From NCBI GenBank assembly GCA_965112155.1, contig OZ218105.1: DNA of 64,000 bases; one strand, given 5' to 3'. The DNA is from Podarcis liolepis. Lineage: Eukaryota. Below, piece by piece: positions 15,995 to 60,771 of this stretch (within the stretch, counting starts at the first letter, position 1; every line of letters starts with the position of its first letter). Both the position numbers and the translations under genes were made by a program. The notes beneath the pieces were generated by a model. The model saw only the letters and a program-made list of their open reading frames with translations. It made no database searches and was not told where the DNA came from.

Positions 15995-17555
15995 CTGATT
16001 TGGACTATAAGTTGAAATGCGCACTGTTGTAACACCCTCTTAGAATTTTACCATGATTTGAACAGGGGCTATGTTTCCACCATTTCATTTCTTGTCACAT
16101 TTTACTGTTTCCCTGAACCACCCAACATAGAATTTCGGGGGTGTGTGTGTGTTAAAATCAGGATTTAAGAAGCAAATTGAAATTATTATTTTTTTTACAC
16201 AAATCGGTCCAACGGAAATTAATAATGAAGTTTTTTTAGTTTTTTTTAGGGGGAGGATTAAAATTGCTGAGGAATGAAAAGAATACAGAACAAAGAGCTC
16301 AGATTCAAGAGCGAGTTTGAAGATTTAGAAAGCACAGAAGCATTCTTGCATAGAACTGAGAATAAAAGCACTTGAGCAGTTACTGGAACAGAAGGCTTGC
16401 TTTTGCCTACTGCTGTGGTCCGTATATCAGTGCTGAAATTGGACATTAATTAGCACTTTATTTGCTGTTGTGCTCCTTTTCTTCCAAATATTTCCTTTGG
16501 GGCCATGACAGCCATTTCCTGCCCTTTCATCTTTTTTCCCCCTAGTGATTGAACTATTAGCCTCCTGTACCTGTGAGAGAATGAATATTAGCTACTTATG
16601 GAAGAACCAAAGAGCTAAATAGCATGCACCACATGTAGGTATAAGGATGCAATGAAATTAAGGTTACGTCTGTCAGGCCTTAGGGAGAAAAATATCACAC
16701 CATTAAAAAAAGAAAGAAAGAAACTCAGAGGAAGAAGGAGAAAAAGCCCTCAAAATTTCAAATCAGAAAGTGGCATGTGAAAGGATTTTTATTAAATCCT
16801 GTTGTACCTTAAAGATATGCTTAAGTTCTTGGTGACTTGGGATGAACTTCATCATTTATGTAATGGCTTTTTAAAACCTAGATCCAAAAGGAGTTAAAAT
16901 TAAAAGGATTCATGACTCTCTTTTTTTGAACCGGGCTGCAAAGTGTGGAGCATTGTAGCATATTCCAACAAACCACTTAACCATGTAATTAAATCAGAGG
17001 CATTAGAGTAGCTCATTTGAAATTAACTGGAGCTGCTTAAATGCTAGGCCTTATCATTATTATTCATTTATATAGTGCAGTGAGCATTCAGAGTACTATA
17101 CTCCCCTTATCAGGGTCATCCTTGTAAGGTGGGTCATTATTACCCCCATTTTGCACCTCAGGAATTGAGGACGAAGCACACTGGTGTCACTCAAGTCTAC
17201 CCATGAAAGCTCAGTCTCACCAGGGATCAAGCCCACTGTACAATCACACTTTAAGTGCCTTGCTTGTTAAATGACAGCATGCCGTCATATACACATTTCA
17301 AAACACAGAGACTAACTTTGGTTAGGACATGGTTTTACAGACTGTGGTGCCATTATAGATTATACGTAATGGTGAGCCCATACTGAATCTAATTGAATGA
17401 ATCCGTGTTTCATCTAAATCCTCTACAATAACACATGATTCTCATATGTATTTGAGACATAGATATAGATACAGATACAAAGATAGATTACTATGCTCAC
17501 AGAGACACACATATATATGCAGATTAAAAATATATTGTATGAACCATATATGAGA

Positions 17556-17558
<3 letters not shown>

Positions 17559-17608
<50 letters not shown>
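17559..17608. repeat. (GA)n microsatellite
   Basis: Direct inspection. Confidence 0.97.
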
Positions 17609-17610
<2 letters not shown>

Positions 17611-20600
17611 CTCAAACCCATATATATATGGTTCATGTGAAATATTGTACTCTGCATACAGTCACCCTGGACATTGAATACAGTAATATCATTGAGGAGT
17701 ACTTGTGTAGGCAGGTGAGCTCCAGTTTTGAAGGAGCTCTCTATGTGGACCTTCCAGAATCAGTGGACTTGCTTAGCATCAGTAGCACTCTGATCAGCAC
17801 AAGTGGGGAACTGAGAGCCGCTACGTTAACTTCCCACAATTACCCAGAGTGGTGCTACATCAAGGGCATTATGGTTGGACCAGTGTCATTTTAAAAAAAC
17901 ATTTTGGATAGAGCAGGATAGACAACAGCACTGGTAGCAGCCTAAGGAGGGCTGGCCCTGATGCCAGGCTTAAAAGTTCTTCCCAATGGAACATCCTGCA
18001 AACATCCTCCATCTGTGGAAGCTTGCACAAGGACTTCCATTTGCATGATGGGGCTTTGCCTCCTCTTCTTCACCGGTGTACTCTCCACGCACCCCAAAAT
18101 TGCTTCATGGAGGTGAGGGGAAACCTCAGAGCAGCAGGCAGGAGAAATTATTGAACGAACATGGCATTGAATTCCACTCACTTTGGTGGGTTTTCCTGCC
18201 GGGGCTTTGGATGTTTTTAAACGAGTTGCAATTTTCACCCTGAACAGATATTTCAGCAGCTGTATGGATAATGTCATTGGATTATAATTTGATGTTCTTT
18301 TAACTGGGTTGTTTTGTGCCTTTATTTCTATCCTGCAGTGTCATTTGTATACCCATTAAAAACCCACATGGGCATGTAAATTGGAATTCTTAGAACTGTT
18401 CATCTGCAGAATCAATTGCAGCTCAAAAACCCAATACCTTACAGAATGGCTTTTCCCATTTGAGCCTGACTGGACCCTGATGTCAACATCAGTGACCCTT
18501 CTCTTTGTGCCCTTATGAGCAGAAATCTGGAGGGCAGCAACAAGAGAACTGACCGTTTCAAAATGGACTCCCCTTCATAGAATTATCTCTTGGCCTGGCA
18601 CTGATGTGGACATCTTTTGGTGCCAGGCCAAGACATTTCTCTTCTGCTTGGCATTTAAGTATCAATATTCTTTGCAGCAGTTGCAGAAATTGGGGGGGGG
18701 TTTCTCTGGTGGTTAGGGAGATAGTTGGTGGAATTGTTTTAAGATTTGATTGCTTTGGGTTGTGTATTGATTTTAAATATTTTAAAATAGTATATTTTAC
18801 TATCATTTTGTAAGTCGCTTTGAGTCATTTATTAATAAGCTCATTAATAAACAAACCGACAATATTCTGTAAAAGAACCCTAAATCAACAGTTTCTTATT
18901 ACTCTGAGTAAAATGATACCACTTTTGAAGTTCAGGGCTACCATCATTTTGCCTTGTGCCCAATTCTCATTCCATTTTCTCTGAATCTCATGCAACAGAT
19001 TTTATTTTATTTTATTGAGTTATTCCTGCATGCAATTTGTGTCCTGTGTGGCCACATTTGTGCTACTCAATCCCAAGATCCCCATCTGAGGGCAATTAAC
19101 TTATTTAATCAAACTCAGAAAAATAGAACAAAATGATTGTTCCCAATTCTGCTGCTTCCTGGATGAAAACTTAAGTAGAACTACTAAAATAGAACAAAAT
19201 GTGTATTTTGCCTTTGTTCCTGTGTGCTCATACGCTGTACGCAAAAGCCCTTGGAGGAATTTCAAGTAGGTGATTGTTGGTAATCATTTTGTTTAAATGT
19301 GCAAGGTTGCACAGAACCTCAGTCTATCAGGAAACAGAATGTTCTTGCTCAATTATATTAGCAATCATTATTTCAATGGTGGAAAGTTCCACAGTAAATA
19401 ATACAGACTCTTTATCATGCTTAAAAAGAAGTGCTTCTCTTTAAAAATCACAGGAGATTTCAAAACAGTCAGGAGGGAGGAAGAGACAGTCTGTTTGCTC
19501 TCAAACAAGTAAAATTAAGCTATTCTCTTGTCCCTGAGACTATTTTACCCTGTAGATAACCCGGGACAATGCTGTGCCTGTCAATAGGAGACAAGGAGAA
19601 AAAGCTCCAGGATGATCTTGTAATCGTTATGTTCATATGCATTGCAATTTGCAAATATGTTTCTGAATGACAATTTAAAAGGATATGTGGCATGATTCAT
19701 CTTTCCCTCTTATTTTTTTTCTTAGCAGGAGGCTTCTGTTCATAGAATTACACAGTGTGACTCCCAGGAAAACAGCAAGATTTGATAAGTATTTGTTTCA
19801 TAGGGCGAGTATTTAGCAGGGTCCTTGGGGATATGTCCCTTCTAATTTTTGACATTCTGATTAGGGCTATTCCTGACTAGGGTTTATTGTTTTGATAAAT
19901 CCTTCCTTTGTACCTTCTTTCTGTCCCCAGGGTAAAATGATATCCCTGGGACCAGATTCTGCTTTCCAGATTGATAGTGTAAATCCTGAGCAGGATTTGG
20001 ATTTACAGAGTACACATGGATACTACACTTTATAGTTAAAACTGGGTTGGTTCTGGGAGTTGAAACTAACACCATTTTAAAAGCCCATTTGGTGTACCTT
20101 GGAGTTAATGAAAGTGCACTCACAGAATTGAAACCATAGGACCATTATCTTAGGTTAGGGAGGAGAAAAGAGTGACGCTCCAATGTTATAAGATTATGAC
20201 TCCCATTATCCCTGTCAATTAAATTGAAAGGATGAGTGTTGAAGTCCACCTTCATATGGACCATCACAAGCTCCCCCTTCCTGTATTTGGTAGAGTTGGT
20301 TTGGTGTAGAGATAATGAAGCAAACGATGCCCTTGGAAAGTGACCCCTTTCATCCTTTGTCCTGTCTCAGAGCCATAGGATATTTGTTTACCTATTACGC
20401 CATGGCAGGCCCAGAGGTAGCATGACCCAATTATTGATCTACCAAGTGTGTTCTTCCAAGACAGCATCTGTCTCTAAGCTTGGTGGGCTGGGGCAGCTGA
20501 AGCTCAGCAAGGAGATTTGTGTCCTGTTGACCAGGCAAGGCCAGAATATCAGGTTCATAGTACCGGTAGCAGGCTTGGCCAATCAAGAGACTTCCTGTCT

Positions 20601-20894
20601 GCCATTCTTGAAGGCCGGTATTTCACCCTCCAGTTCTCATCTGTGATTAAAGAGGGCTCTGAGGACTGAGTGGGGCCTAGAGAAGCAAGTAGCAATGAAC
20701 CACAAGGGCCAATCTGACTAGATTTGCATTCCCTTGAAGTTTATACCTTCAACTACTATGGGAACAAGTACTTGCAGCTATAGGGATTTGAACTCTTGTC
20801 AATAGTGATGATGGGGTGACAAAAGAAAGCTTATTTCTTTATAATAAATAAAAAACCCACAATGAGCACATATTATGTATTGCTAGATTAATAA

Positions 20895-21255
20895 AGCTAG
20901 TTTATTTTATTTAACAAAATTTATATACTGCTTCATTCTAATTAAATCACTTTACTATAAATATTATAATTATCCATAGAAAGAGTTAAAATAATTAAAA
21001 ACATTTAAAAATAACCAAAATTAACAGTAACATAGATACGTCAATATCTACAGCAAAGATGCCTACTTGATGCCTATTGGCAGGAGGTTCCAAAGCTCTG
21101 TCACACTAAAATATTGATTTCTTGGAACTGCATGTCAAGTGGGTACATATGAGGTAAGGCAATCCTGCCAGTAAACTGCTCCTAAGTCGTTAACAGCTAT
21201 ATACATTGAACTTGGCTTGGTAGCAAATCAGCAAAACAGTGCACATCTCTGCAGA
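20895..21255 (-). mobile_element. Old L2 LINE 3' fragment
   Basis: AT-rich tail, then ggcaggaggttccaaag and ttgaacttggcttggtagcaaatcagc, typical of L2 ORF2 in reverse. Confidence 0.55.
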
Positions 21256-21594
21256 GAGATCAAGAAGGAGGAGCAAGGTCACACTCCCACTGTCCCATGT
21301 TAATCCATCAGGGCAACCCAGGGCAACTCAGTTACTGAGAAGAATTCACATAAGTTGTGTTGGTGGAATCTTCCAGGGGTTCTTCTCCTCCTGAACTGGC
21401 AAAAGAGGAAAGATAAATGAGCCTAGAGACGTCCATGAACCATGAAGCACCAGGTGGCAAACATGAGTATTAAGACAAAAGCATGCAAGCCTGGCAGAAG
21501 GAAGGTCACCACCCCATGAACCTTCTCTGAGTTATAGCAACTGACCAGTCATACTAGGAAATGAAGGCTCCAAATTTTGGTAGCTTCTATGATG

Positions 21595-21969
21595 AGGATA
21601 TTATGCACTGTGGTCTAAACCACTGAGCCTCTTGGGCTTGCCGATCAGAAGGTTGGTGGTTCAAATCCACGTGGCAGGGTGAGCTCCTGTTGCTCTGTCC
21701 CAGCTCCTGCCAACCTAGCAGTTCGAAAACACACCAGTGCAAGTAGATAACTAGGTACAGCTGTGGCGGGAAGGTAAATGGCATTTCTGTGCACTCTAGC
21801 TTCCGTCACAGTGTTCTGTTGCGGCAGAAGCGGTTTAGACATGCTGGCCACATGGCTGTCTGAGGACAAACGCCGGCTCCCTCAGCCTGAAAGCTAGATG
21901 AGCGCCGCATCCCCATAGTCGACTTTGACTGGACTCAACCATCCAGGGGTCCTTTACCTTTTACCTTTT
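21595..21969 (+). mobile_element. Sauria SINE (Squam1)
   Basis: B box ggttcaaatcc, body cccagctcctgccaacctagcagttcgaaa, tail cctttaccttttacc. Possible TSD tatgatg. Confidence 0.95.
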
Positions 21970-23044
21970 TATGATGCAGTCCTACCTCTTCATGTTATAC
22001 TTTTGGAAAATTAGTACTGGAGGCACCTTGTGGAGACTTTGACCATTATCAAAGTGGTCTCTAGGTGCAGCCTCTGACAACACTGCTCCATCTTTCTGAG
22101 AGAGAGAAATAATGGAATCCTGCTTCATAAGGTGATTCCTTTGCCTCACAATGATAATTTTAAAAAGAGTTAAAAATGTTATGGGCTTTCAGCAGGACAC
22201 TGCAGGATATGAGCTGACTGGAAACAAAGTGGTGTGACTACTCCAAAACTTTTGTACGTGCATAAAGTATTGAAACCAGGGTCACACGTGATCACCTCAA
22301 AAGCATCATGAGTACAAATCCATAATGAAAAGGATGTATGGGGGTTCTGAAGCTTGGTTACCTCATCAACCAATCAAACAGCTGATGAGGTCACAGCACA
22401 GACTTACTCCATGTCTTTTTTTTTATCAAGAGAAACCAACTTCACATCCTCGTCACATTGGATACTGTATCAAAAGCACCTATCTGGGGGAGGAGGCTGA
22501 ATCTGTACTAAACTAACTTATAAAAGTAGTTCAGATTTTCATGGCCACTAACATTGTTCTTGCCCTGTTTACTCAGCTGCTTGATTGTTTTGTCATATTA
22601 AATACATAACATATGTCCCTGATGGAGTCAGAGAATAGTATGAAAAAGTAGCTCTATGCTGCTCGTTCGAGTGCTGTGCATTAGTTGCTCATTTGCAATA
22701 GGGTTAAAATACGGGCTCTAAAAGTGACTGGAATATTTTTTAAAGAATGATTTCCATTTGGAAGCTTCACTATGGAACCCTTTTCCTGTTCATCTCAATA
22801 ATCACATAAAGTTTTCCAAATACAAACTGAACACAGTTTGCTGAAACTAGTGGCCCGACGAAAGAAACTGCTGGTGATAAGGGTTGTGAAGAGTCTGTCA
22901 TCCTCCTCAGTCTGTGGGCGTTCAAGGCACTGCACTCTGGTCTCTGGGTGAGAGCTGCATTGCTTTTCTACTCGCTATGGGCAGACCAGCTATAAAGAAG
23001 CAAGTCAACCAGAAGGGAACCGGAACAGGAAATGCTGTTTTAAA

Positions 23045-23248
23045 GCCCTGTGGAACGTCCTCCCATCAGATGTCAAGGAAATAAACAACTATCTGACTTT
23101 TAGAAGACATCTGAAGGCAGCCTTGTTTAGGGAAGTTTTTAATGTTTGATGGTTTATTGTGCTTTTAATTCTGTTAGGAGCCGCCCAGAGTGGCTGGAGA
23201 AACCCAGCCAGATGGGTGGGGTATAAATAATAAATTATTATTATTATT
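23045..23248 (+). mobile_element. L2-clade LINE 3' end
   Basis: Encodes the end of ORF2 (LWNVLPSDVKEINNYLTFRRHLKAALFREVF), then the 3'UTR and a (TAT)n tail. Confidence 0.8.
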
Positions 23249-23744
23249 AAAAATGAGTAGACTGCTGGCTATATGTGTGTTGTATGTGTGTAGAAGGTGT
23301 TTAGTGTGAGTTCCCACAAATTTGTGTGATGTTCAGGGGGTACGATTTGAGCAACTTCCATTTTGCGCCTGCCCCTCCCCTTGCTGGCTTTTTTCCATTG
23401 GTTATCCATAGCTTGGACCAAAACAGCAAACGCAAGAAGTTCCTGCCGTCTAATCTCCTAATTCCTCTCCTGAACAGAATTTCAGAACACCAGGTGTTAA
23501 ATAAATAAACAAGAATGCAAAAGAACGCATTGTATGCATGCTCATAACTTGGAGCTCAAACCTTGTAGGCATGCTCATAACTCCAGTATTTACTGGTTGC
23601 AAGAACATTTCTCAGTCCAAACACATCCCAACATGGGTGTGGACAGGAAAAAGTGCAACCAACCTCCCGAAAACAGCAACTTGGGAGTAGTGGTGTAGAA
23701 GGCAGAAAACATCAGAACTAAACAGCAGCTATAGTGTTGGAAAT

Positions 23745-24107
23745 GGGACGCGGGTGGCACTGTGGGTAAAGCCTCAGTGCCTAGGACTTGCCAATCGTAT
23801 GGTCGGTGGTTCGAATCCCCGCAGCGGGGTGAGCTCCCGCCGTTCGGTCCCAGCTCCTGCCCACCTAGCAGTTCGAAAGCACCCCTAAGTGCAAGTAGAT
23901 ACATAGGGACCGCTTACCTAGCGGGAAGGTAAATGGCATTCCATGTGCGGTGCTGGTGCTGGCTCGCCAGTGCAGCTTCGTCACGCTGGCCACGTGACCC
24001 AGAAGTGTCTTTGGACAGCGCCGGCTCCCGGCCTCTAGAGTGAGATGAGCATGCAAACCCTAGAGTCGGTCACGACTGGCCCGTACGGGCAGGGGTACCT
24101 TTACCTT
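23745..24107 (+). mobile_element. Sauria SINE (Squam1), full-length, distinct subfamily
   Basis: Starts gggacgcgggtggc, B box ggttcgaatcc, tail acctttacctt. 14-bp TSD tatagtgttggaaa (23730-23743) / tattgtgttggaaa (24108-24121). Confidence 0.95.
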
Positions 24108-24324
24108 TATTGTGTTGGAAAGACTCCATGTCAGAAAAACCTTCAAAGCATCATTCATAGAGGGTGAAAACTTTCAAGGATTTGGCAGACAGTTTTCAGC
24201 ACAGTTTTCAGTTTGAATGGTGACCAAATGCCATGTCAGGGCTATGGGATGCAAACTTGTCTGGGCTTCTGATACAGCATAGACTCAGCGGTACAGTTTG
24301 TGAGTTGCATGCAGGGGGCTAGAC

Positions 24325-24470
24325 TTTTAGAATTTCCAGTTTAAGCATCTCAAGCAGCAGGGCTGGGAAAGCCCTCTGCTCAAGTTCCTGGGAGAGCAAT
24401 TGTCAGTCAGCCAAGATAGTATCAACCTAGATTGATCATGGCTCTGATCCCAAATAAGGTAGTTTCTTAT
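24325..24470 (+). mobile_element. Squam3-type SINE 3' part
   Basis: gcatctc...gggctgggaaagccctctgc...gtcagtcagccaagatagtatcaacctagat. Confidence 0.55.
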
Positions 24471-25194
24471 CACACATGTAAGTAGCAAGGGATGTCGGTC
24501 TCTTTCCTGAGAGGGACTTTGAGGCCGGTAACAGAAAAACCTGAGCCAACAAAAGTGTAATTTGAAAGCCACAGAAGTATCCACAGTATTTATGTTCCTT
24601 TATATACCTATCAATTTTGCAGCTACTCCTGAGGCTTTCAAATGACACAATGTGGGTAGAGACACCTTTCCCAAGGATCTTAACATCCAAATCATATTAG
24701 TATTTGTCATATTTATCCAAAGACCTTATCATCCCCTGGAAAATTCTCAGGTTAGTCTCACAACAAGGATTACTTTTGCATTTCCTAGTTGGAGAAACGT
24801 TTGATCAAAGTTGTCCTAATCTTAGCAGAACACTGTATGTGACTCTGACCCTTCACCGCCCTGGAAGCGGCCTCCTGTCCCTCTTAGAATTCAGCTGTGT
24901 GACCCAAGAGGGACATCATCTGTGGCATCAAAGTGCATGACAGTTGAATGGCCTTGATATTTTGCTTTTGCAATAAAGCAGATGATTCTGATACTACAGG
25001 TGATGACCATTTCACAAGGGGGGTGATTCCGCCTAAGTGTGCCCACACCCCATCAGGTCATGCTCCCATTATGCCACACCTCCATTACACCCCTGTTCTG
25101 CCCCCAGTCTTCCTTCTTCTGGGTCCAAAAGGACCCATGAGTCTGTGATCACACATCATTTGGACATGCCTAAAATGGCCGCCTCCTGTGTAGA

Positions 25195-25337
25195 AGAAAT
25201 GGACCATTGATCTGATTGGCAGCGGCTGAGGCTTTTCAGATCCCCTGCTACCTGACACTTCAATTGTTGATGCCATGGATTGAACATGGGTCCTTCTGCA
25301 TGCAAAACAAGTGCTCTACTGAGCTACAGTCTCTCCT
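25195..25337 (-). mobile_element. Squam3-type SINE
   Basis: Reverse-complement tRNA head: ggattgaacatgggtccttctgcatgcaaaacaagtgctctactgagctac. Confidence 0.7.
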
Positions 25338-25496
25338 TGTCTATTGCCTGCCTGTTTCATTTCTTTTTTTCCCTCCAAACATGTTTAAGTTAGCTAAAAA
25401 CATTTTTGCTGAATAGGCATTCTAGGAATAATTTAAGCATGGCCTGGGCCGGATTCTTCCACTGCTTATCTATTTGTACTTTGTTGCAACTATGAA

Positions 25497-58854: not shown

Positions 58855-59170
58855 TAGTTAAACTATGAAGCTAACTCCCACAGGAGGCAGTGATGGCCAA
58901 CAACTTGGGTGGCTTTAAAAGAGGATTAGACAAATTCATGGGGGACAAGGCTATCAGCGGCTACTAGCCGTGACAGCTATGCTCCAGTCTCCACAGCTGA
59001 AGACAGTAATGCTTCCAAGTACCAGTTGCTGGAATCTGCAGGAGGGGAAAGAACATTTGTGCTTAAGTACTGCTTGTGGGTTTCCCACAGACATCTGGCT
59101 AGCTACTCTGAAAACACAATGCTGGTCTAGGTGGGTCATTGGCCTGTTACAATGGGCTCTTCCTATGCCG
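58855..59170 (+). mobile_element. CR1 LINE 3' end
   Basis: gtgatggccaacaacttgggtggctttaaaagaggattagacaaattcatgg (FKRGLDKFM) followed by a CR1-type 3'UTR. Confidence 0.8.
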
Positions 59171-59448
59171 TTCCCTGATATATAGCACAGATGTTGGCAG
59201 AGTCACTATAAGGGTGTGCAAGGCTTCTCTGTGTGCAAAAAGAAACCCAGAATTTAGACCTTGTGGCCTTGCAGAGAGGGCCAAAGCAATAGGTCCAGTG
59301 GTTGGGGGGCACCATGAAGGAAGAGACAGAAAGGAAATGGATATGTCTGTTGTCACAAAGAGGGAAAGAAGCCCATCCATAACTGGTGAATATCTAAATA
59401 AAAAAATTCCTTCCAGTAGCACCTTAAAGACCAACTAAGTTATTTCTT

Positions 59449-59487
59449 GGTATGAGCTTTCGTGTGCATGCACACTTCTTCAGATAC
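59449..59487 (-). ncRNA. Minimal type I hammerhead ribozyme (intact core)
   Basis: Minus strand reads GUAU-CUGAAGA-A-GUGUG-CAUG-CACAC-GAAA-GC-UC/AUAC. It has helix I GUAU:AUAC, the CUGAnGA and GAAA core boxes, a helix II hairpin and a palindromic AGCU mini helix III. Predicted cleavage falls between 59454 and 59453. Confidence 0.85.
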
Positions 59488-59498
59488 ACTGAAACAGT

Positions 59499-59537
59499 GT
59501 ATCTGAAGAAGTGTGCATGCACACAAAAGCTCATACC
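59499..59537 (+). ncRNA. Minimal hammerhead ribozyme copy with core G-to-A change (probably inactive)
   Basis: gtatctgaagaagtgtgcatgcacacAaaagctcatacc is identical to the minus-strand copy except that GAAA becomes AAAA at 59525, a CpG site. Confidence 0.7.
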
Positions 59538-60771
59538 AAGAAATAACTTAGTTGGTCTTTAAGGTGCTACTGGAAGGAATTTTTTTATTTTGACTATGGC
59601 AGACCAACACGGCTACCTATCTGTAACTGGTGAATATCTGTCAGTGGTAGATTATTGGATAATGCCAACAATAAGCGGGACCTAACAGGTGCCTGCCTAA
59701 TTATTGGCTGGGGGAGGCAGCCATTGCCAAGGGAGCAGTAAGGAGGGGCTCATCAAAGGGACTGTAGAATTCAATAGTATATAATATCAGAACAAAAAAT
59801 ATAGAACTCGTCTCAAAAAGACCGAGGAGTCATTTGCTCAGGAGCAAGTACATTTATTACCAGGAGACAGCCACTGTGTTGAGGCACTTGCTCCTTTCTG
59901 TCCATTGAGCATATATTCTACCAGTTTCACTGAGAAGCCCCTAGATCAGCACAGCACTTCATAGGATCCAGTAGAGAAGACTTGGCACTAGTGAAAACAT
60001 ACAGCTGTCAGCTAAAGCTAGAAACAATGGCCCCCTAACAATATCCCCACACCCCCATCTCCAATTTCATGTGGAGGGAGTTGCCAATTTCCCCCGTTCA
60101 TTTGCACAGGACGTAGTTATACCTAAAATGGTTGAAATTAATGTGTTGTTGCAGTTAATGCGGCTCCTTCTAATCAGACTCCCTGACAAACAAAAGATGT
60201 CAGAGTATTAGCACAAACATTAAACATACATTAAACAGTCATAGATTGCTGCCCACAAACTTCTTCACTGGTGCCAGTCTTAATCATGCTCCTGGGGTTG
60301 GCACTTACTGGCATCTCCCTATGAGGACTGGGTGGGTGATGAGGACTCTGGCTATCTCCTAAAGTTTCCTGTTCCATTTAAAAGTCCTAAATATCCGTGC
60401 ATAATGATTTCTCCAGGCTTGTTAAATTAAGTTAATTTGTTTATACAGTATCTATCTGATTTATGTCTATATTCTTTCGTAATTGCCTTTATGGTTGTTT
60501 CTGTTAATTATGGGATCAATAGAAAAAGATTTTTAATTAAACTAAATATAGTGAAACACTCCACAATATGATACAGTGTTATTACTATAATCTAATATCT
60601 ATATCCGATATGATATCCACTCTGGATATAGGCTCTCATTACAAGTGTCTTTTCCTTTTACATGCTACACTGACCCCTGAACCTTTCAGGTTGTTAAGTG
60701 CAAAATTGCATGATAGGGATGTTGCTTTGGATTTGGGAATCCACTTCTTTGAAATTCCACTTACCTGTCCC

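What the first reader, a model, noticed from the sequence alone, without database searches (positions are those of the whole stretch)
59380..59639. Miniature palindromic mobile element carrying back-to-back hammerhead ribozymes
Seen: a 228-bp insert between perfect 16-bp direct repeats (taactggtgaatatct). It consists of two 96-bp inverted arms separated by only 3 nt, plus a 33-nt tail. Each arm reads outward from the centre as GUAU-CUGAAGA-A-GUGUG-CAUG-CACAC-GAAA-GC-UC-AUAC, a minimal type I hammerhead with a palindromic AGCU helix III. Established: Penelope-like retroelements carry such minimal hammerheads in their pseudo-LTRs, often have an inverted 5' pLTR copy, and these ribozymes are thought to cleave as dimers. 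Inference: this is a young PLE-derived insertion with no RT or GIY-YIG coding sequence. If the same architecture recurs at many loci it is a ribozyme-bearing non-autonomous (retrozyme-like) family in lizards rather than a one-off truncation.
Basis: partly seen in the sequence, partly recalled or inferred. Interest (0 to 1): 0.85.

Follow-up and report, generated by a model that had tools for sequence, protein, structure and literature searches.

The report
Tiny head-to-head Penelope retroelement insertion
A young 228-bp insertion in this lizard genome is a dead-on-arrival fragment of a Penelope-like jumping gene, laid down as two mirrored copies of its ribozyme-bearing end; this layout is already described for these elements, so it is a clean example, not a discovery.

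Summary
There is a 228-bp insert between perfect 16-bp direct repeats. It has two 96-nt inverted arms around a 3-nt centre and a 33-nt tail on one side. Each arm carries a minimal Penelope-type hammerhead motif.

Contigs from two related organisms cross the site with exactly 244 bp missing. That is an empty site with one copy of the 16-mer, so the insertion is real and young.

The sequence belongs to a very high-copy family found in all three organisms tested.

Every structural feature matches published Penelope-like element (PLE) insertions: an inverted 5'-truncated copy, a 30-40-bp tail at one end, a TSD, and a min-HHR with an extra base before helix II and a palindromic 15.2-16.2 pair.

Only the minus-strand hammerhead has an intact core. 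The plus-strand copy has A at G12, at a CpG. Both are masked by a hairpin of about -170 kcal/mol, and neither has a same-strand partner for dimer cleavage.

Other copies turn or truncate at other positions and some continue upstream into a TATA/Inr-like sequence. I therefore read this as a by-product of PLE integration, probably priming from both strands, not a self-propagating retrozyme-like unit.

First readers of this scan noted many similar PLE hairpins on other pieces of this genome. I could not test linkage to an RT/GIY-YIG ORF.

The parts
59380..59395 (.). Left copy of the 16-bp target-site duplication TAACTGGTGAATATCT
   Evidence: Relatives carry a single copy at the empty site (records 10 and 26).
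59396..59491 (-). Left arm, 96 nt. Its PLE sense strand is the window's minus strand. It ends at the proximal end-point and has no tail.
   Evidence: Inverted repeat. Very high-copy family. It shares the private variant at 59443 with its mirror position 59543 (table 3).
59450..59487 (-). Minimal type I hammerhead motif with an intact core. The predicted cleavage is between 59454 and 59453 on the minus strand.
   Evidence: Sequence parse. Descriptor hit. Features compared with PMC4209133.
59489..59497 (.). Inversion centre CTG-AAA-CAG. The spacer AAA is 59492-59494. The same mini-palindrome is native to longer copies of the family.
   Evidence: In one search table 7, contigs of other copies match through 59497 and then continue with a shared upstream sequence.
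59495..59590 (+). Right arm, 96 nt. Its PLE sense strand is the window's plus strand.
59499..59536 (+). Second hammerhead motif with A instead of G at core position G12 (59525). This is the CpG partner of 59461. The nominal cleavage site is between 59532 and 59533.
59591..59623 (+). 33-nt tail, present on the right side only. It contains an ATG (59600) and the AC-rich CCAACAC.
   Evidence: Depth in the tail bin is as high as in the arms (table 2). It matches the 30-40-bp PLE 'tail'.
59624..59639 (.). Right copy of the 16-bp target-site duplication

Best explanation
This is a severely 5'-truncated, non-coding insertion of a very high-copy Penelope-like retroelement (PLE) family. It arose in the lineage of the sequenced lizard after that lineage split from two sampled relatives.

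Shown:
- It is an insertion with a 16-bp TSD.
- It consists of two mirrored copies of the same 96-nt stretch, plus a 33-nt tail on one side.
- That stretch carries a PLE-type minimal hammerhead.
- Both arms come from the same source variant.

Inferred mechanism:
- The PLE endonuclease made a staggered break.
- Each of the two 3' ends primed reverse transcription of PLE RNA at one of the element's two start sites. The top strand used the proximal site (left arm, no tail). The bottom strand used the distal site 33 nt further on (right arm plus tail).
- Both cDNAs ran about 96 nt to roughly the 5' end of the RNA, a few bases upstream of the hammerhead.
- They were joined head to head at a native CTG-TTT-CAG mini-palindrome.

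Role of the hammerheads:
- They are cargo of the parent's pseudo-LTR, not a function of this locus.
- One has lost G12 at a CpG site.
- Both are locked in a 96-bp hairpin in any transcript that spans the insert.
- They sit on opposite strands, so they cannot form the same-strand dimer these minimal ribozymes need.

The insert has no ORF and lacks the TATA/Inr-like sequence seen upstream in longer copies, so it is most likely dead on arrival.
For: Insertion and age:
- Contigs of organisms B and G join 59379 directly to 59624, so 244 bp are absent (records 26 and 10).
- The flanks differ by about 2.3% (B) and 4.2% (G). I computed this from the other-letter counts in table 8.
- The arms differ by one CpG transition.

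Family:
- About 16,500 to 25,400 contigs per DNA run were laid on the 1.2-kb stretch, which also holds a second high-copy repeat.
- Summed depth over the insert is about 10^6, against about 10-54 on the unique flanks, in all three organisms.
- Nearly all family contigs differ from this copy at 59443 and at its mirror 59543. Both arms therefore share one private variant (table 3).

PLE identity:
- The hammerhead has CUGANGA, an extra base between positions 9 and 10.1, a G10.1-C11.1 pair, a long helix II, a 4-bp helix I and a palindromic 15.2-16.2 pair. These are the features listed in PMC4209133.
- That paper also reports dual min-HHRs 100-700 bp apart on opposite strands and attributes them to truncated PLEs.
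- An inverted 5'-truncated copy plus a 30-40-bp tail at one end is the published PLE layout.

Mechanism:
- The Anolis PLE protein cleaves and extends both strands. It starts RT at two sites, and the sequence between them is the tail.
- From figures, the distal start in that element lies 85-92 nt past the hammerhead cut. Here the distance is 91 nt.
- A tail on one side only is not what simple snap-back copying of one cDNA predicts.

Inner end:
- 55, 34 and 46 contigs (X1, X3, X11) match to 59497 and then share an upstream sequence. Its complement has TATATATAA about 19 nt before TCAGTG (table 7).
- Many joints have their right side at 59497-59501 (table 5).

Masking: the full hairpin folds at -168 and -178 kcal/mol, against -107 and -112 when the hammerhead is enforced.
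Against: - No copy of this family with an RT/GIY-YIG ORF could be fetched. PLE origin rests on architecture, not on a linked ORF.
- The TATA/Inr reading rests on a 30-nt consensus with only 0.69-0.73 agreement, and on no RNA 5'-end data.
- The left arm matches the native sequence 7 nt beyond the Inr-like A. That fits a snap-back at the mini-palindrome on a longer RNA better than run-off at a transcription start.
- The joints table shows only 15 of 365 joints, and it comes from short collapsed contigs. The frequency of each architecture is therefore unknown.
- Rfam's hammerhead models do not score the motif, and its monomer fold is no more stable than shuffles.
- Precise deletion between the 16-bp repeats in the relatives cannot be formally excluded.
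Confidence: 0.75

Rival explanations
1. A distinct non-autonomous, retrozyme-like family. Under this reading, the 228-bp hairpin unit, or its 96/129-nt half, is itself the transcribed and trans-mobilised element, and the hammerhead processes its RNA.
For: - The family is extremely abundant in three organisms.
- Unchecked first-reader notes list several units of recurring size elsewhere in this genome: about 100, 129, 132, 196 and 250-263 bp.
- Joints cluster at 59497-59501.
Against: - The insert lacks the TATA/Inr-like sequence that lies upstream in longer copies (table 7), so it has no evident promoter.
- Retrozymes are head-to-tail tandems that allow same-strand dimer cleavage and circularisation. 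This insert is head to head.
- Other copies show many different junctions (table 5).
- Recurring sizes are equally explained by a fixed RNA 5' end plus two fixed RT start sites of the parent PLE.
Confidence: 0.12
2. The PLE origin is the same, but the palindrome was made from a single cDNA. That cDNA folded back on the CTG-AAA-CAG mini-hairpin and copied itself (self-priming). One outer end was later trimmed by the endonuclease or by repair.
For: - Every base of the centre is templated under this model. The left arm matches native sequence through 59497 (table 7).
- Self-priming at palindromes was proposed for rotifer Penelope inverted junctions.
- Craig et al. attribute the tail to EN-mediated resolution of the intermediate.
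- Both arms share the same private variant (table 3).
Against: - Self-copying predicts symmetric outer ends, but here only one side has the tail.
- The tail-less end falls at a position that matches the published spacing of the second RT start site, not at an arbitrary trim point.
- A 3-bp stem is a weak primer.
Confidence: 0.2
3. A cut-and-paste DNA transposon derivative, either a MITE or a foldback element, whose terminal inverted repeats happen to contain hammerhead-like motifs.
For: Long inverted arms flanked by direct repeats.
Against: - The 16-bp TSD is longer than the 2-10-bp TSDs I recall for DNA transposon superfamilies.
- The asymmetric 33-nt tail breaks the terminal symmetry.
- Arms occur singly and extend upstream into non-inverted sequence in other copies.
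- The motif matches PLE min-HHR features point by point.
Confidence: 0.02
4. A locus-level function. Either the hairpin has been exapted as a small-RNA or dsRNA precursor, or the intact minus-strand hammerhead cleaves a host transcript.
For: - The near-perfect 96-bp hairpin scores against many miRNA precursor models, all below their gathering scores.
- One hammerhead core is intact.
Against: - The insertion is absent from two close relatives, so there is no conservation.
- All miRNA hits are far below threshold and only reflect the generic hairpin shape.
- The hammerhead is masked by about 60 kcal/mol and has no same-strand partner.
- No RNA evidence is specific to this locus. The 'RNA?' run holds only contigs of other copies embedded in longer records (table 8).
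Confidence: 0.03

Closest known systems
Canonical EN+ Penelope-like element insertions with an inverted pLTR and a one-sided tail (for example Pen2a_Av of Adineta vaga, Penelope of Drosophila virilis, Naiad)
   Same: An inverted 5'-truncated copy abuts the element head to head. A 30-40-bp tail (31 bp in Pen2a_Av, 33 bp here) sits at one end only. The whole is flanked by a TSD. There are palindromes at the inverted junction, and a TATA plus Inr-like pair about 20 bp apart in the pLTR.
   Different: Nothing lies between the inverted copies here: no ORF and no direct pLTR. The insert is just the last 96-129 nt on each side. The TSD is longer (16 bp versus 8-10 bp in the rotifer examples).
Poseidon_Ac (PAc) of Anolis carolinensis
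   Same: It is a lizard PLE with a minimal hammerhead of the same architecture: CUGANGA, an extra base, G-C closed helix II, GAAA, and a palindromic 15.2-16.2 pair. This is my reading of the consensus. It has two RT start sites that define the tail, with the distal one 85-92 nt past the hammerhead cut (91 nt here). The protein cleaves and extends both target strands.
   Different: The sequence is unrelated at the nucleotide level. PAc's ORF starts inside helix II. Here the loop II ATG is closed by a stop after 9 codons (ATG at 59517, TAA at 59544-59546). The only other ATG of the sense arm plus tail lies in the tail, at 59600.
PLE minimal hammerhead ribozymes (Cervera and de la Pena 2014; Lunse, Weinberg and Breaker 2017, the latter known to me only through citation)
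   Same: All conserved core bases and the family-specific extras are present on the minus strand. The earlier work also saw pairs of motifs 100-700 bp apart on opposite strands and ascribed them to truncated PLEs.
   Different: Helix II is a perfect 14-nt palindrome, and helix III is the 4-nt AGCU variant. Activity has not been tested.
Metazoan non-LTR retrozymes
   Same: Short, non-coding, hammerhead-bearing, PLE-related repeats with TSDs.
   Different: Retrozymes are head-to-tail tandems with canonical type I hammerheads and give circular RNAs. This is a single head-to-head pair with min-HHRs on opposite strands.
L1 twin-priming inversions (from my own knowledge: Ostertag and Kazazian 2001)
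   Same: The second target 3' end primes on RNA instead of on the cDNA, which gives an inverted 5' segment within one TSD-flanked insertion.
   Different: In L1 the two segments are different parts of the RNA. Here both primers copy the same 96 nt, which gives a true palindrome.

Membership tests
Hammerhead ribozyme, PLE minimal type I (min-HHR) | Core C3-U4-G5-A6-N7-G8-A9 and G12-A13-A14, A15.1/U16.1, and H17 at the cleavage site | tested here: met
   The minus strand at 59450-59487 has every base. The plus-strand copy at 59499-59536 fails at G12, which is A at 59525.
Hammerhead ribozyme, PLE minimal type I (min-HHR) | Family-specific extras: an unpaired base between positions 9 and 10.1, a G10.1-C11.1 pair, a longer helix II, a 4-5-bp helix I, and a palindromic 15.2-16.2 pair with no loop 3 | tested here: met
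   A after CUGAAGA; GUGUG/CACAC closed by G-C; GUAU/AUAC; AGCU. Compared with the feature list in PMC4209133.
Hammerhead ribozyme, PLE minimal type I (min-HHR) | Recognition by curated covariance models | tested here: inconclusive
   No Rfam hammerhead family scores near threshold. The best is HH10 at 17.7 bits against a gathering score of 75. To my knowledge the Rfam hammerhead models expect a closed helix III, which min-HHRs lack.
Hammerhead ribozyme, PLE minimal type I (min-HHR) | Self-cleavage, as a dimer or assisted by protein | not testable with these tools
   No raw RNA reads were available. In this locus the motif is masked by the hairpin.
Penelope-like element insertion | Target-site duplication and absence from an orthologous empty site | tested here: met
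   16-bp TSD. Organisms B and G lack exactly 244 bp (records 26 and 10).
Penelope-like element insertion | A 30-40-bp tail, optionally present at one end | tested here: met
   A 33-nt tail at 59591-59623 on the right only. Definition taken.
Penelope-like element insertion | An inverted 5'-truncated copy joined head to head | tested here: met
   Arms 59396-59491 and 59495-59590, with the hammerhead ends facing the centre.
Penelope-like element insertion | The parent element encodes an RT plus a GIY-YIG endonuclease | not testable with these tools
   - No such ORF among the eight longer window ORFs scanned against Pfam.
- No copies in the searchable collections.
- Unchecked notes report PLE ORF palindromes elsewhere in this genome, but they have not been shown to carry this leader.
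Non-LTR retrozyme | Head-to-tail tandem units that place two hammerheads on one strand | tested here: not met
   The two motifs are on opposite strands. There is no direct repeat of the unit in the window.
MITE / foldback DNA transposon | Symmetric terminal inverted repeats reaching both ends, and a short TSD of fixed length | tested here: not met
   The 33-nt tail makes the right end asymmetric, and the TSD is 16 bp.

The most novel reading that the evidence does not exclude
The short units of this family may be run-off cDNAs of the PLE's leader, from its transcription start to its two RT start sites. These units are a single arm of about 96 or 129 nt, or head-to-head pairs of about 196 or 228 bp. 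If so, each young TSD-flanked copy with an empty ortholog would be a natural record of one integration event in which both target strands primed independently. A genome-wide census of tail sides, spacer orientation and inner ends would then give a direct readout of how PLEs build their so far unexplained inverted repeats.
Probability: 0.35. Interest if true: 0.45.

Novelty: new member of a known kind. Interest (0 to 1): 0.2.

Why it matters
For this locus, very little: it is a recent, non-coding, probably inert retroelement fragment.

Its value is as a very clean specimen. It has a perfect TSD, an empty site in two relatives, and near-identical arms. Its asymmetric tail agrees with the two RT start sites and the double-strand cleavage and extension reported in vitro for an Anolis PLE.

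If thousands of such young mini-insertions exist in this genome, they could be used to test models of PLE integration. The published work itself calls this integration mechanism undefined.

Tried and rejected
- **Rfam scan:** no hammerhead family. The only hits were sub-threshold miRNA models driven by the hairpin, which I rejected as generic.
- **Looking for more copies:**
  - None elsewhere in the window.
  - Exact-pattern scans found nothing in metagenome contigs (two scans), viral contigs or prokaryote genome contigs.
  - The scan's sequence look-up was blank.
- **Looking for a PLE ORF in the window:** 20 ORFs of 110 aa or more, eight tested against Pfam, no RT or endonuclease.
- **Thermodynamic support** for the monomer hammerhead, the tail stem-loop and the arm-tail pairing: z-scores from -0.07 to -0.8, not informative.
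- **Dimer cofold:** the minimum-energy dimer pairs the palindromic helix II between molecules instead of forming helix III. This gives no support for, and no test of, the active dimer.
- **Comparison with Poseidon_Ac** from a paper supplement: same architecture, no usable nucleotide similarity.
- **Papers not held:** Lunse 2017 and Pyatkov 2004.
- **RNA evidence:** the one 'RNA?' run is only guessed to be RNA and holds contigs, so it says nothing about transcription, ends or cleavage.

Full report
**1. What is in the sequence**

Window 59380-59639 reads as follows:
- a 16-mer, TAACTGGTGAATATCT;
- a 96-nt arm (59396-59491);
- the spacer AAA (59492-59494);
- the reverse complement of that arm (59495-59590);
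- 33 further bases, the tail (59591-59623);
- the same 16-mer again.

The repeat finder gives 99-nt arms because three bases of similarity run into the left 16-mer. Inside the insert the arms differ at one position, 59461 C against 59525 A. No other part of the 64-kb window resembles the insert.

**2. The hammerhead motif**

Read outward from the centre, each arm carries these parts:
- GUAU (helix I)
- CUGAAGA (core)
- one extra A
- GUGUG-CAUG-CACAC (helix II)
- GAAA
- GC
- UC
- AUAC (helix I)

On the minus strand (59450-59487) every conserved base is present. The predicted cut is after the C at 59454. On the plus strand (59499-59536) the G of GAAA is an A at 59525. Its partner in the other arm is the C of a CpG (59461-59462), so this looks like ordinary CpG decay after insertion.

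The 2014 description of PLE hammerheads lists an extra base between positions 9 and 10.1, a conserved G10.1-C11.1 pair, a long helix II, a 4-5-bp helix I and a palindromic 15.2-16.2 pair. All are present here. A descriptor I wrote from those features hits once in the window, twice if G12 is relaxed, and never in 200 shuffles.

Rfam's hammerhead models do not score it. The only Rfam hits are sub-threshold miRNA models that respond to any long hairpin. The monomer fold is weak, at -6.8 kcal/mol, and no better than shuffles. That fits ribozymes said to need a partner or a protein.

**3. It is a real and recent insertion**

I laid contigs of four public runs on 58900-60100.
- In organism B a 2090-nt contig covers 59071-59379 and continues without a break at 59624-60100.
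- In organism G a 1505-nt contig does the same.
- Both therefore lack exactly 244 bp, the insert plus one 16-mer.
- Counting other letters in those contigs, the flanks differ from the window by about 2.3% (B) and 4.2% (G).
- The two arms differ by one CpG transition in 96 nt.

The insertion is therefore younger than the split from organism B. Precise deletion between the 16-mers in the relatives cannot be formally excluded, but it is less parsimonious.

**4. It belongs to a very large family**

About 16,500 to 25,400 contigs per DNA run were laid on the stretch, which also holds a second high-copy repeat. The summed depth over the insert is about 10^6, against 10-54 on the unique flanks. The tool warns that this is not a copy number. 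I take it only as 'very highly repeated, in all three organisms'.

Nearly all family contigs carry a different base at 59443 and at its mirror position 59543 (table 3). The two arms of this copy therefore share a private variant and came from the same source.

**5. Other copies differ in architecture**

- In 55, 34 and 46 contigs (X1, X3, X11) the match runs to 59497 and then continues with a shared sequence that does not turn back. On the element's sense strand that continuation reads TATATATAA, about 19 nt, then TCAGTG. This is a TATA-like and an initiator-like motif with the spacing noted for a rotifer Penelope pLTR. Longer copies therefore exist, and the native sequence already contains the CTG-TTT-CAG mini-palindrome that forms the centre here.
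- The joints table shows many different junctions between an antisense arm cut at various points (59422-59483) and a sense arm. The sense arm often starts at 59497-59501 and sometimes elsewhere (59533-59552).
- Summed depth over the central 80 nt is less than half that over the neighbouring arm bins. This is as expected if many copies are 5'-truncated, although contigs that fit both arms confound it.

Breakpoints are therefore variable, but with a preferred inner end a few bases upstream of the hammerhead.

Unchecked first-reader notes from other pieces of this genome describe PLE palindromes of 0.15 to 4.4 kb and single units of about 100 and 129-132 bp. I use these only as leads. They fit the same picture.

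**6. Comparison with published PLE biology**

- The standard description of a PLE insertion is a partial tandem that forms pseudo-LTRs. It is often joined at the 5' end by an inverted 5'-truncated copy, with a 30-40-bp tail at one end only, and with the hammerhead in the pLTR.
- The rotifer example Pen2a_Av has an inverted pLTR, a 31-bp tail on one of the inverted pLTRs, a 9-bp TSD, palindromes at inverted junctions, and TATA plus Inr motifs 20 bp apart.
- In D. virilis the commonest form is flanked by inverted repeats whose size varies from copy to copy.
- The 2014 hammerhead paper already reported pairs of min-HHRs 100-700 bp apart on opposite strands and attributed them to truncated PLEs.
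- For the Anolis element PAc, purified protein cleaves and extends both target strands. It starts reverse transcription at two internal sites, and the sequence between them is the tail.
- From that paper's numbers, the distal start lies 85-92 nt past the hammerhead cut. Here the tail ends 91 nt past the nominal cut and the tail is 33 nt.
- PAc's own hammerhead, read from the consensus, has the same architecture but an unrelated sequence. This window's element is therefore a different PLE family.

**7. Most likely mechanism**

Shown: insertion, TSD, two copies of one template, one-sided tail, PLE-type hammerhead.

Inferred:
- A break was made with a 16-nt stagger.
- The top-strand 3' end primed at the proximal start site and made the left arm.
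- The bottom-strand 3' end primed at the distal site and made the tail plus the right arm.
- Both cDNAs reached about the same point near the RNA's 5' end.
- They were joined at the CTG/CAG microhomology.

A single cDNA that folds back and copies itself would explain the fully templated centre, and has been proposed for PLEs. But it predicts symmetric outer ends, which is not what is seen. I keep it as the main mechanistic rival.

The idea that the inner end is the transcription start is weaker. It rests on a 30-nt consensus, and the left arm matches native sequence 7 nt beyond the initiator-like A.

**8. What the hammerheads can do here**

- Any transcript spanning the insert folds into a 96-bp hairpin, at -168 and -178 kcal/mol for the two strands.
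- Forcing the hammerhead helices costs about 61-66 kcal/mol.
- The two motifs are on opposite strands, so neither has the same-strand neighbour that dimer cleavage needs. One has also lost G12.
- The insert also lacks the upstream promoter-like sequence.

I conclude that the ribozymes are passengers and the insert is not itself mobile.

**9. What could not be done**

- I could not fetch other copies. Scans of metagenome, viral and prokaryote collections found nothing.
- The window holds no PLE ORF among the ORFs tested. Linkage of this leader to an RT/GIY-YIG gene therefore remains untested.
- No raw RNA reads were available, so transcription, RNA ends and cleavage are untested.

**10. Verdict**

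- The PLE reading is supported on architecture.
- The 'miniature mobile element / retrozyme-like family' reading is not supported.
- It is a textbook-clean but ordinary PLE by-product.
- Modest extra value would come only from a genome-wide census of such copies as records of PLE integration.

Noticed in passing
window 58870-59150: A second, unrelated, very highly repeated element lies about 230 bp left of the insert. Summed contig depth reaches 4x10^5 against about 21 on unique sequence, in all three organisms. From memory it looks like the 3' end of a LINE. It was not classified.
   Followed up: no
window 59551-59558 and 59608-59615: GTTGGTCT in the arm is perfectly complementary to AGACCAAC in the tail. 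In the RNA this stem would bracket the proximal end-point (59590) and present the AC-rich stretch. It recalls the 'AC-rich stem loop' where the Anolis PLE starts reverse transcription. The fold z-score is not significant.
   Followed up: partly
window 59624-59632: Contigs of other family copies in run X19 match the window 6-9 nt into the right TSD (TAACTG...). This hints at microhomology between the target primer and the RNA just beyond the distal start site. The support is weak: 7 contigs, agreement 0.47.
   Followed up: no
window 59462-59475 and 59511-59524: Helix II of the hammerhead (GUGUGCAUGCACAC) is a perfect 14-nt palindrome. Two copies prefer to pair helix II between molecules (-30.6 kcal/mol). 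An unchecked note elsewhere in this genome describes a PLE palindrome centred on this stem, so it may serve as an alternative turning point.
   Followed up: partly
window 59372-59379 and 59616-59623: The 8 nt before each 16-mer are 5/8 identical (CCCATCCA versus CCTATCTG, the end of the tail), so the repeat finder reports a 24-nt repeat at 88%. This is probably chance.
   Followed up: partly
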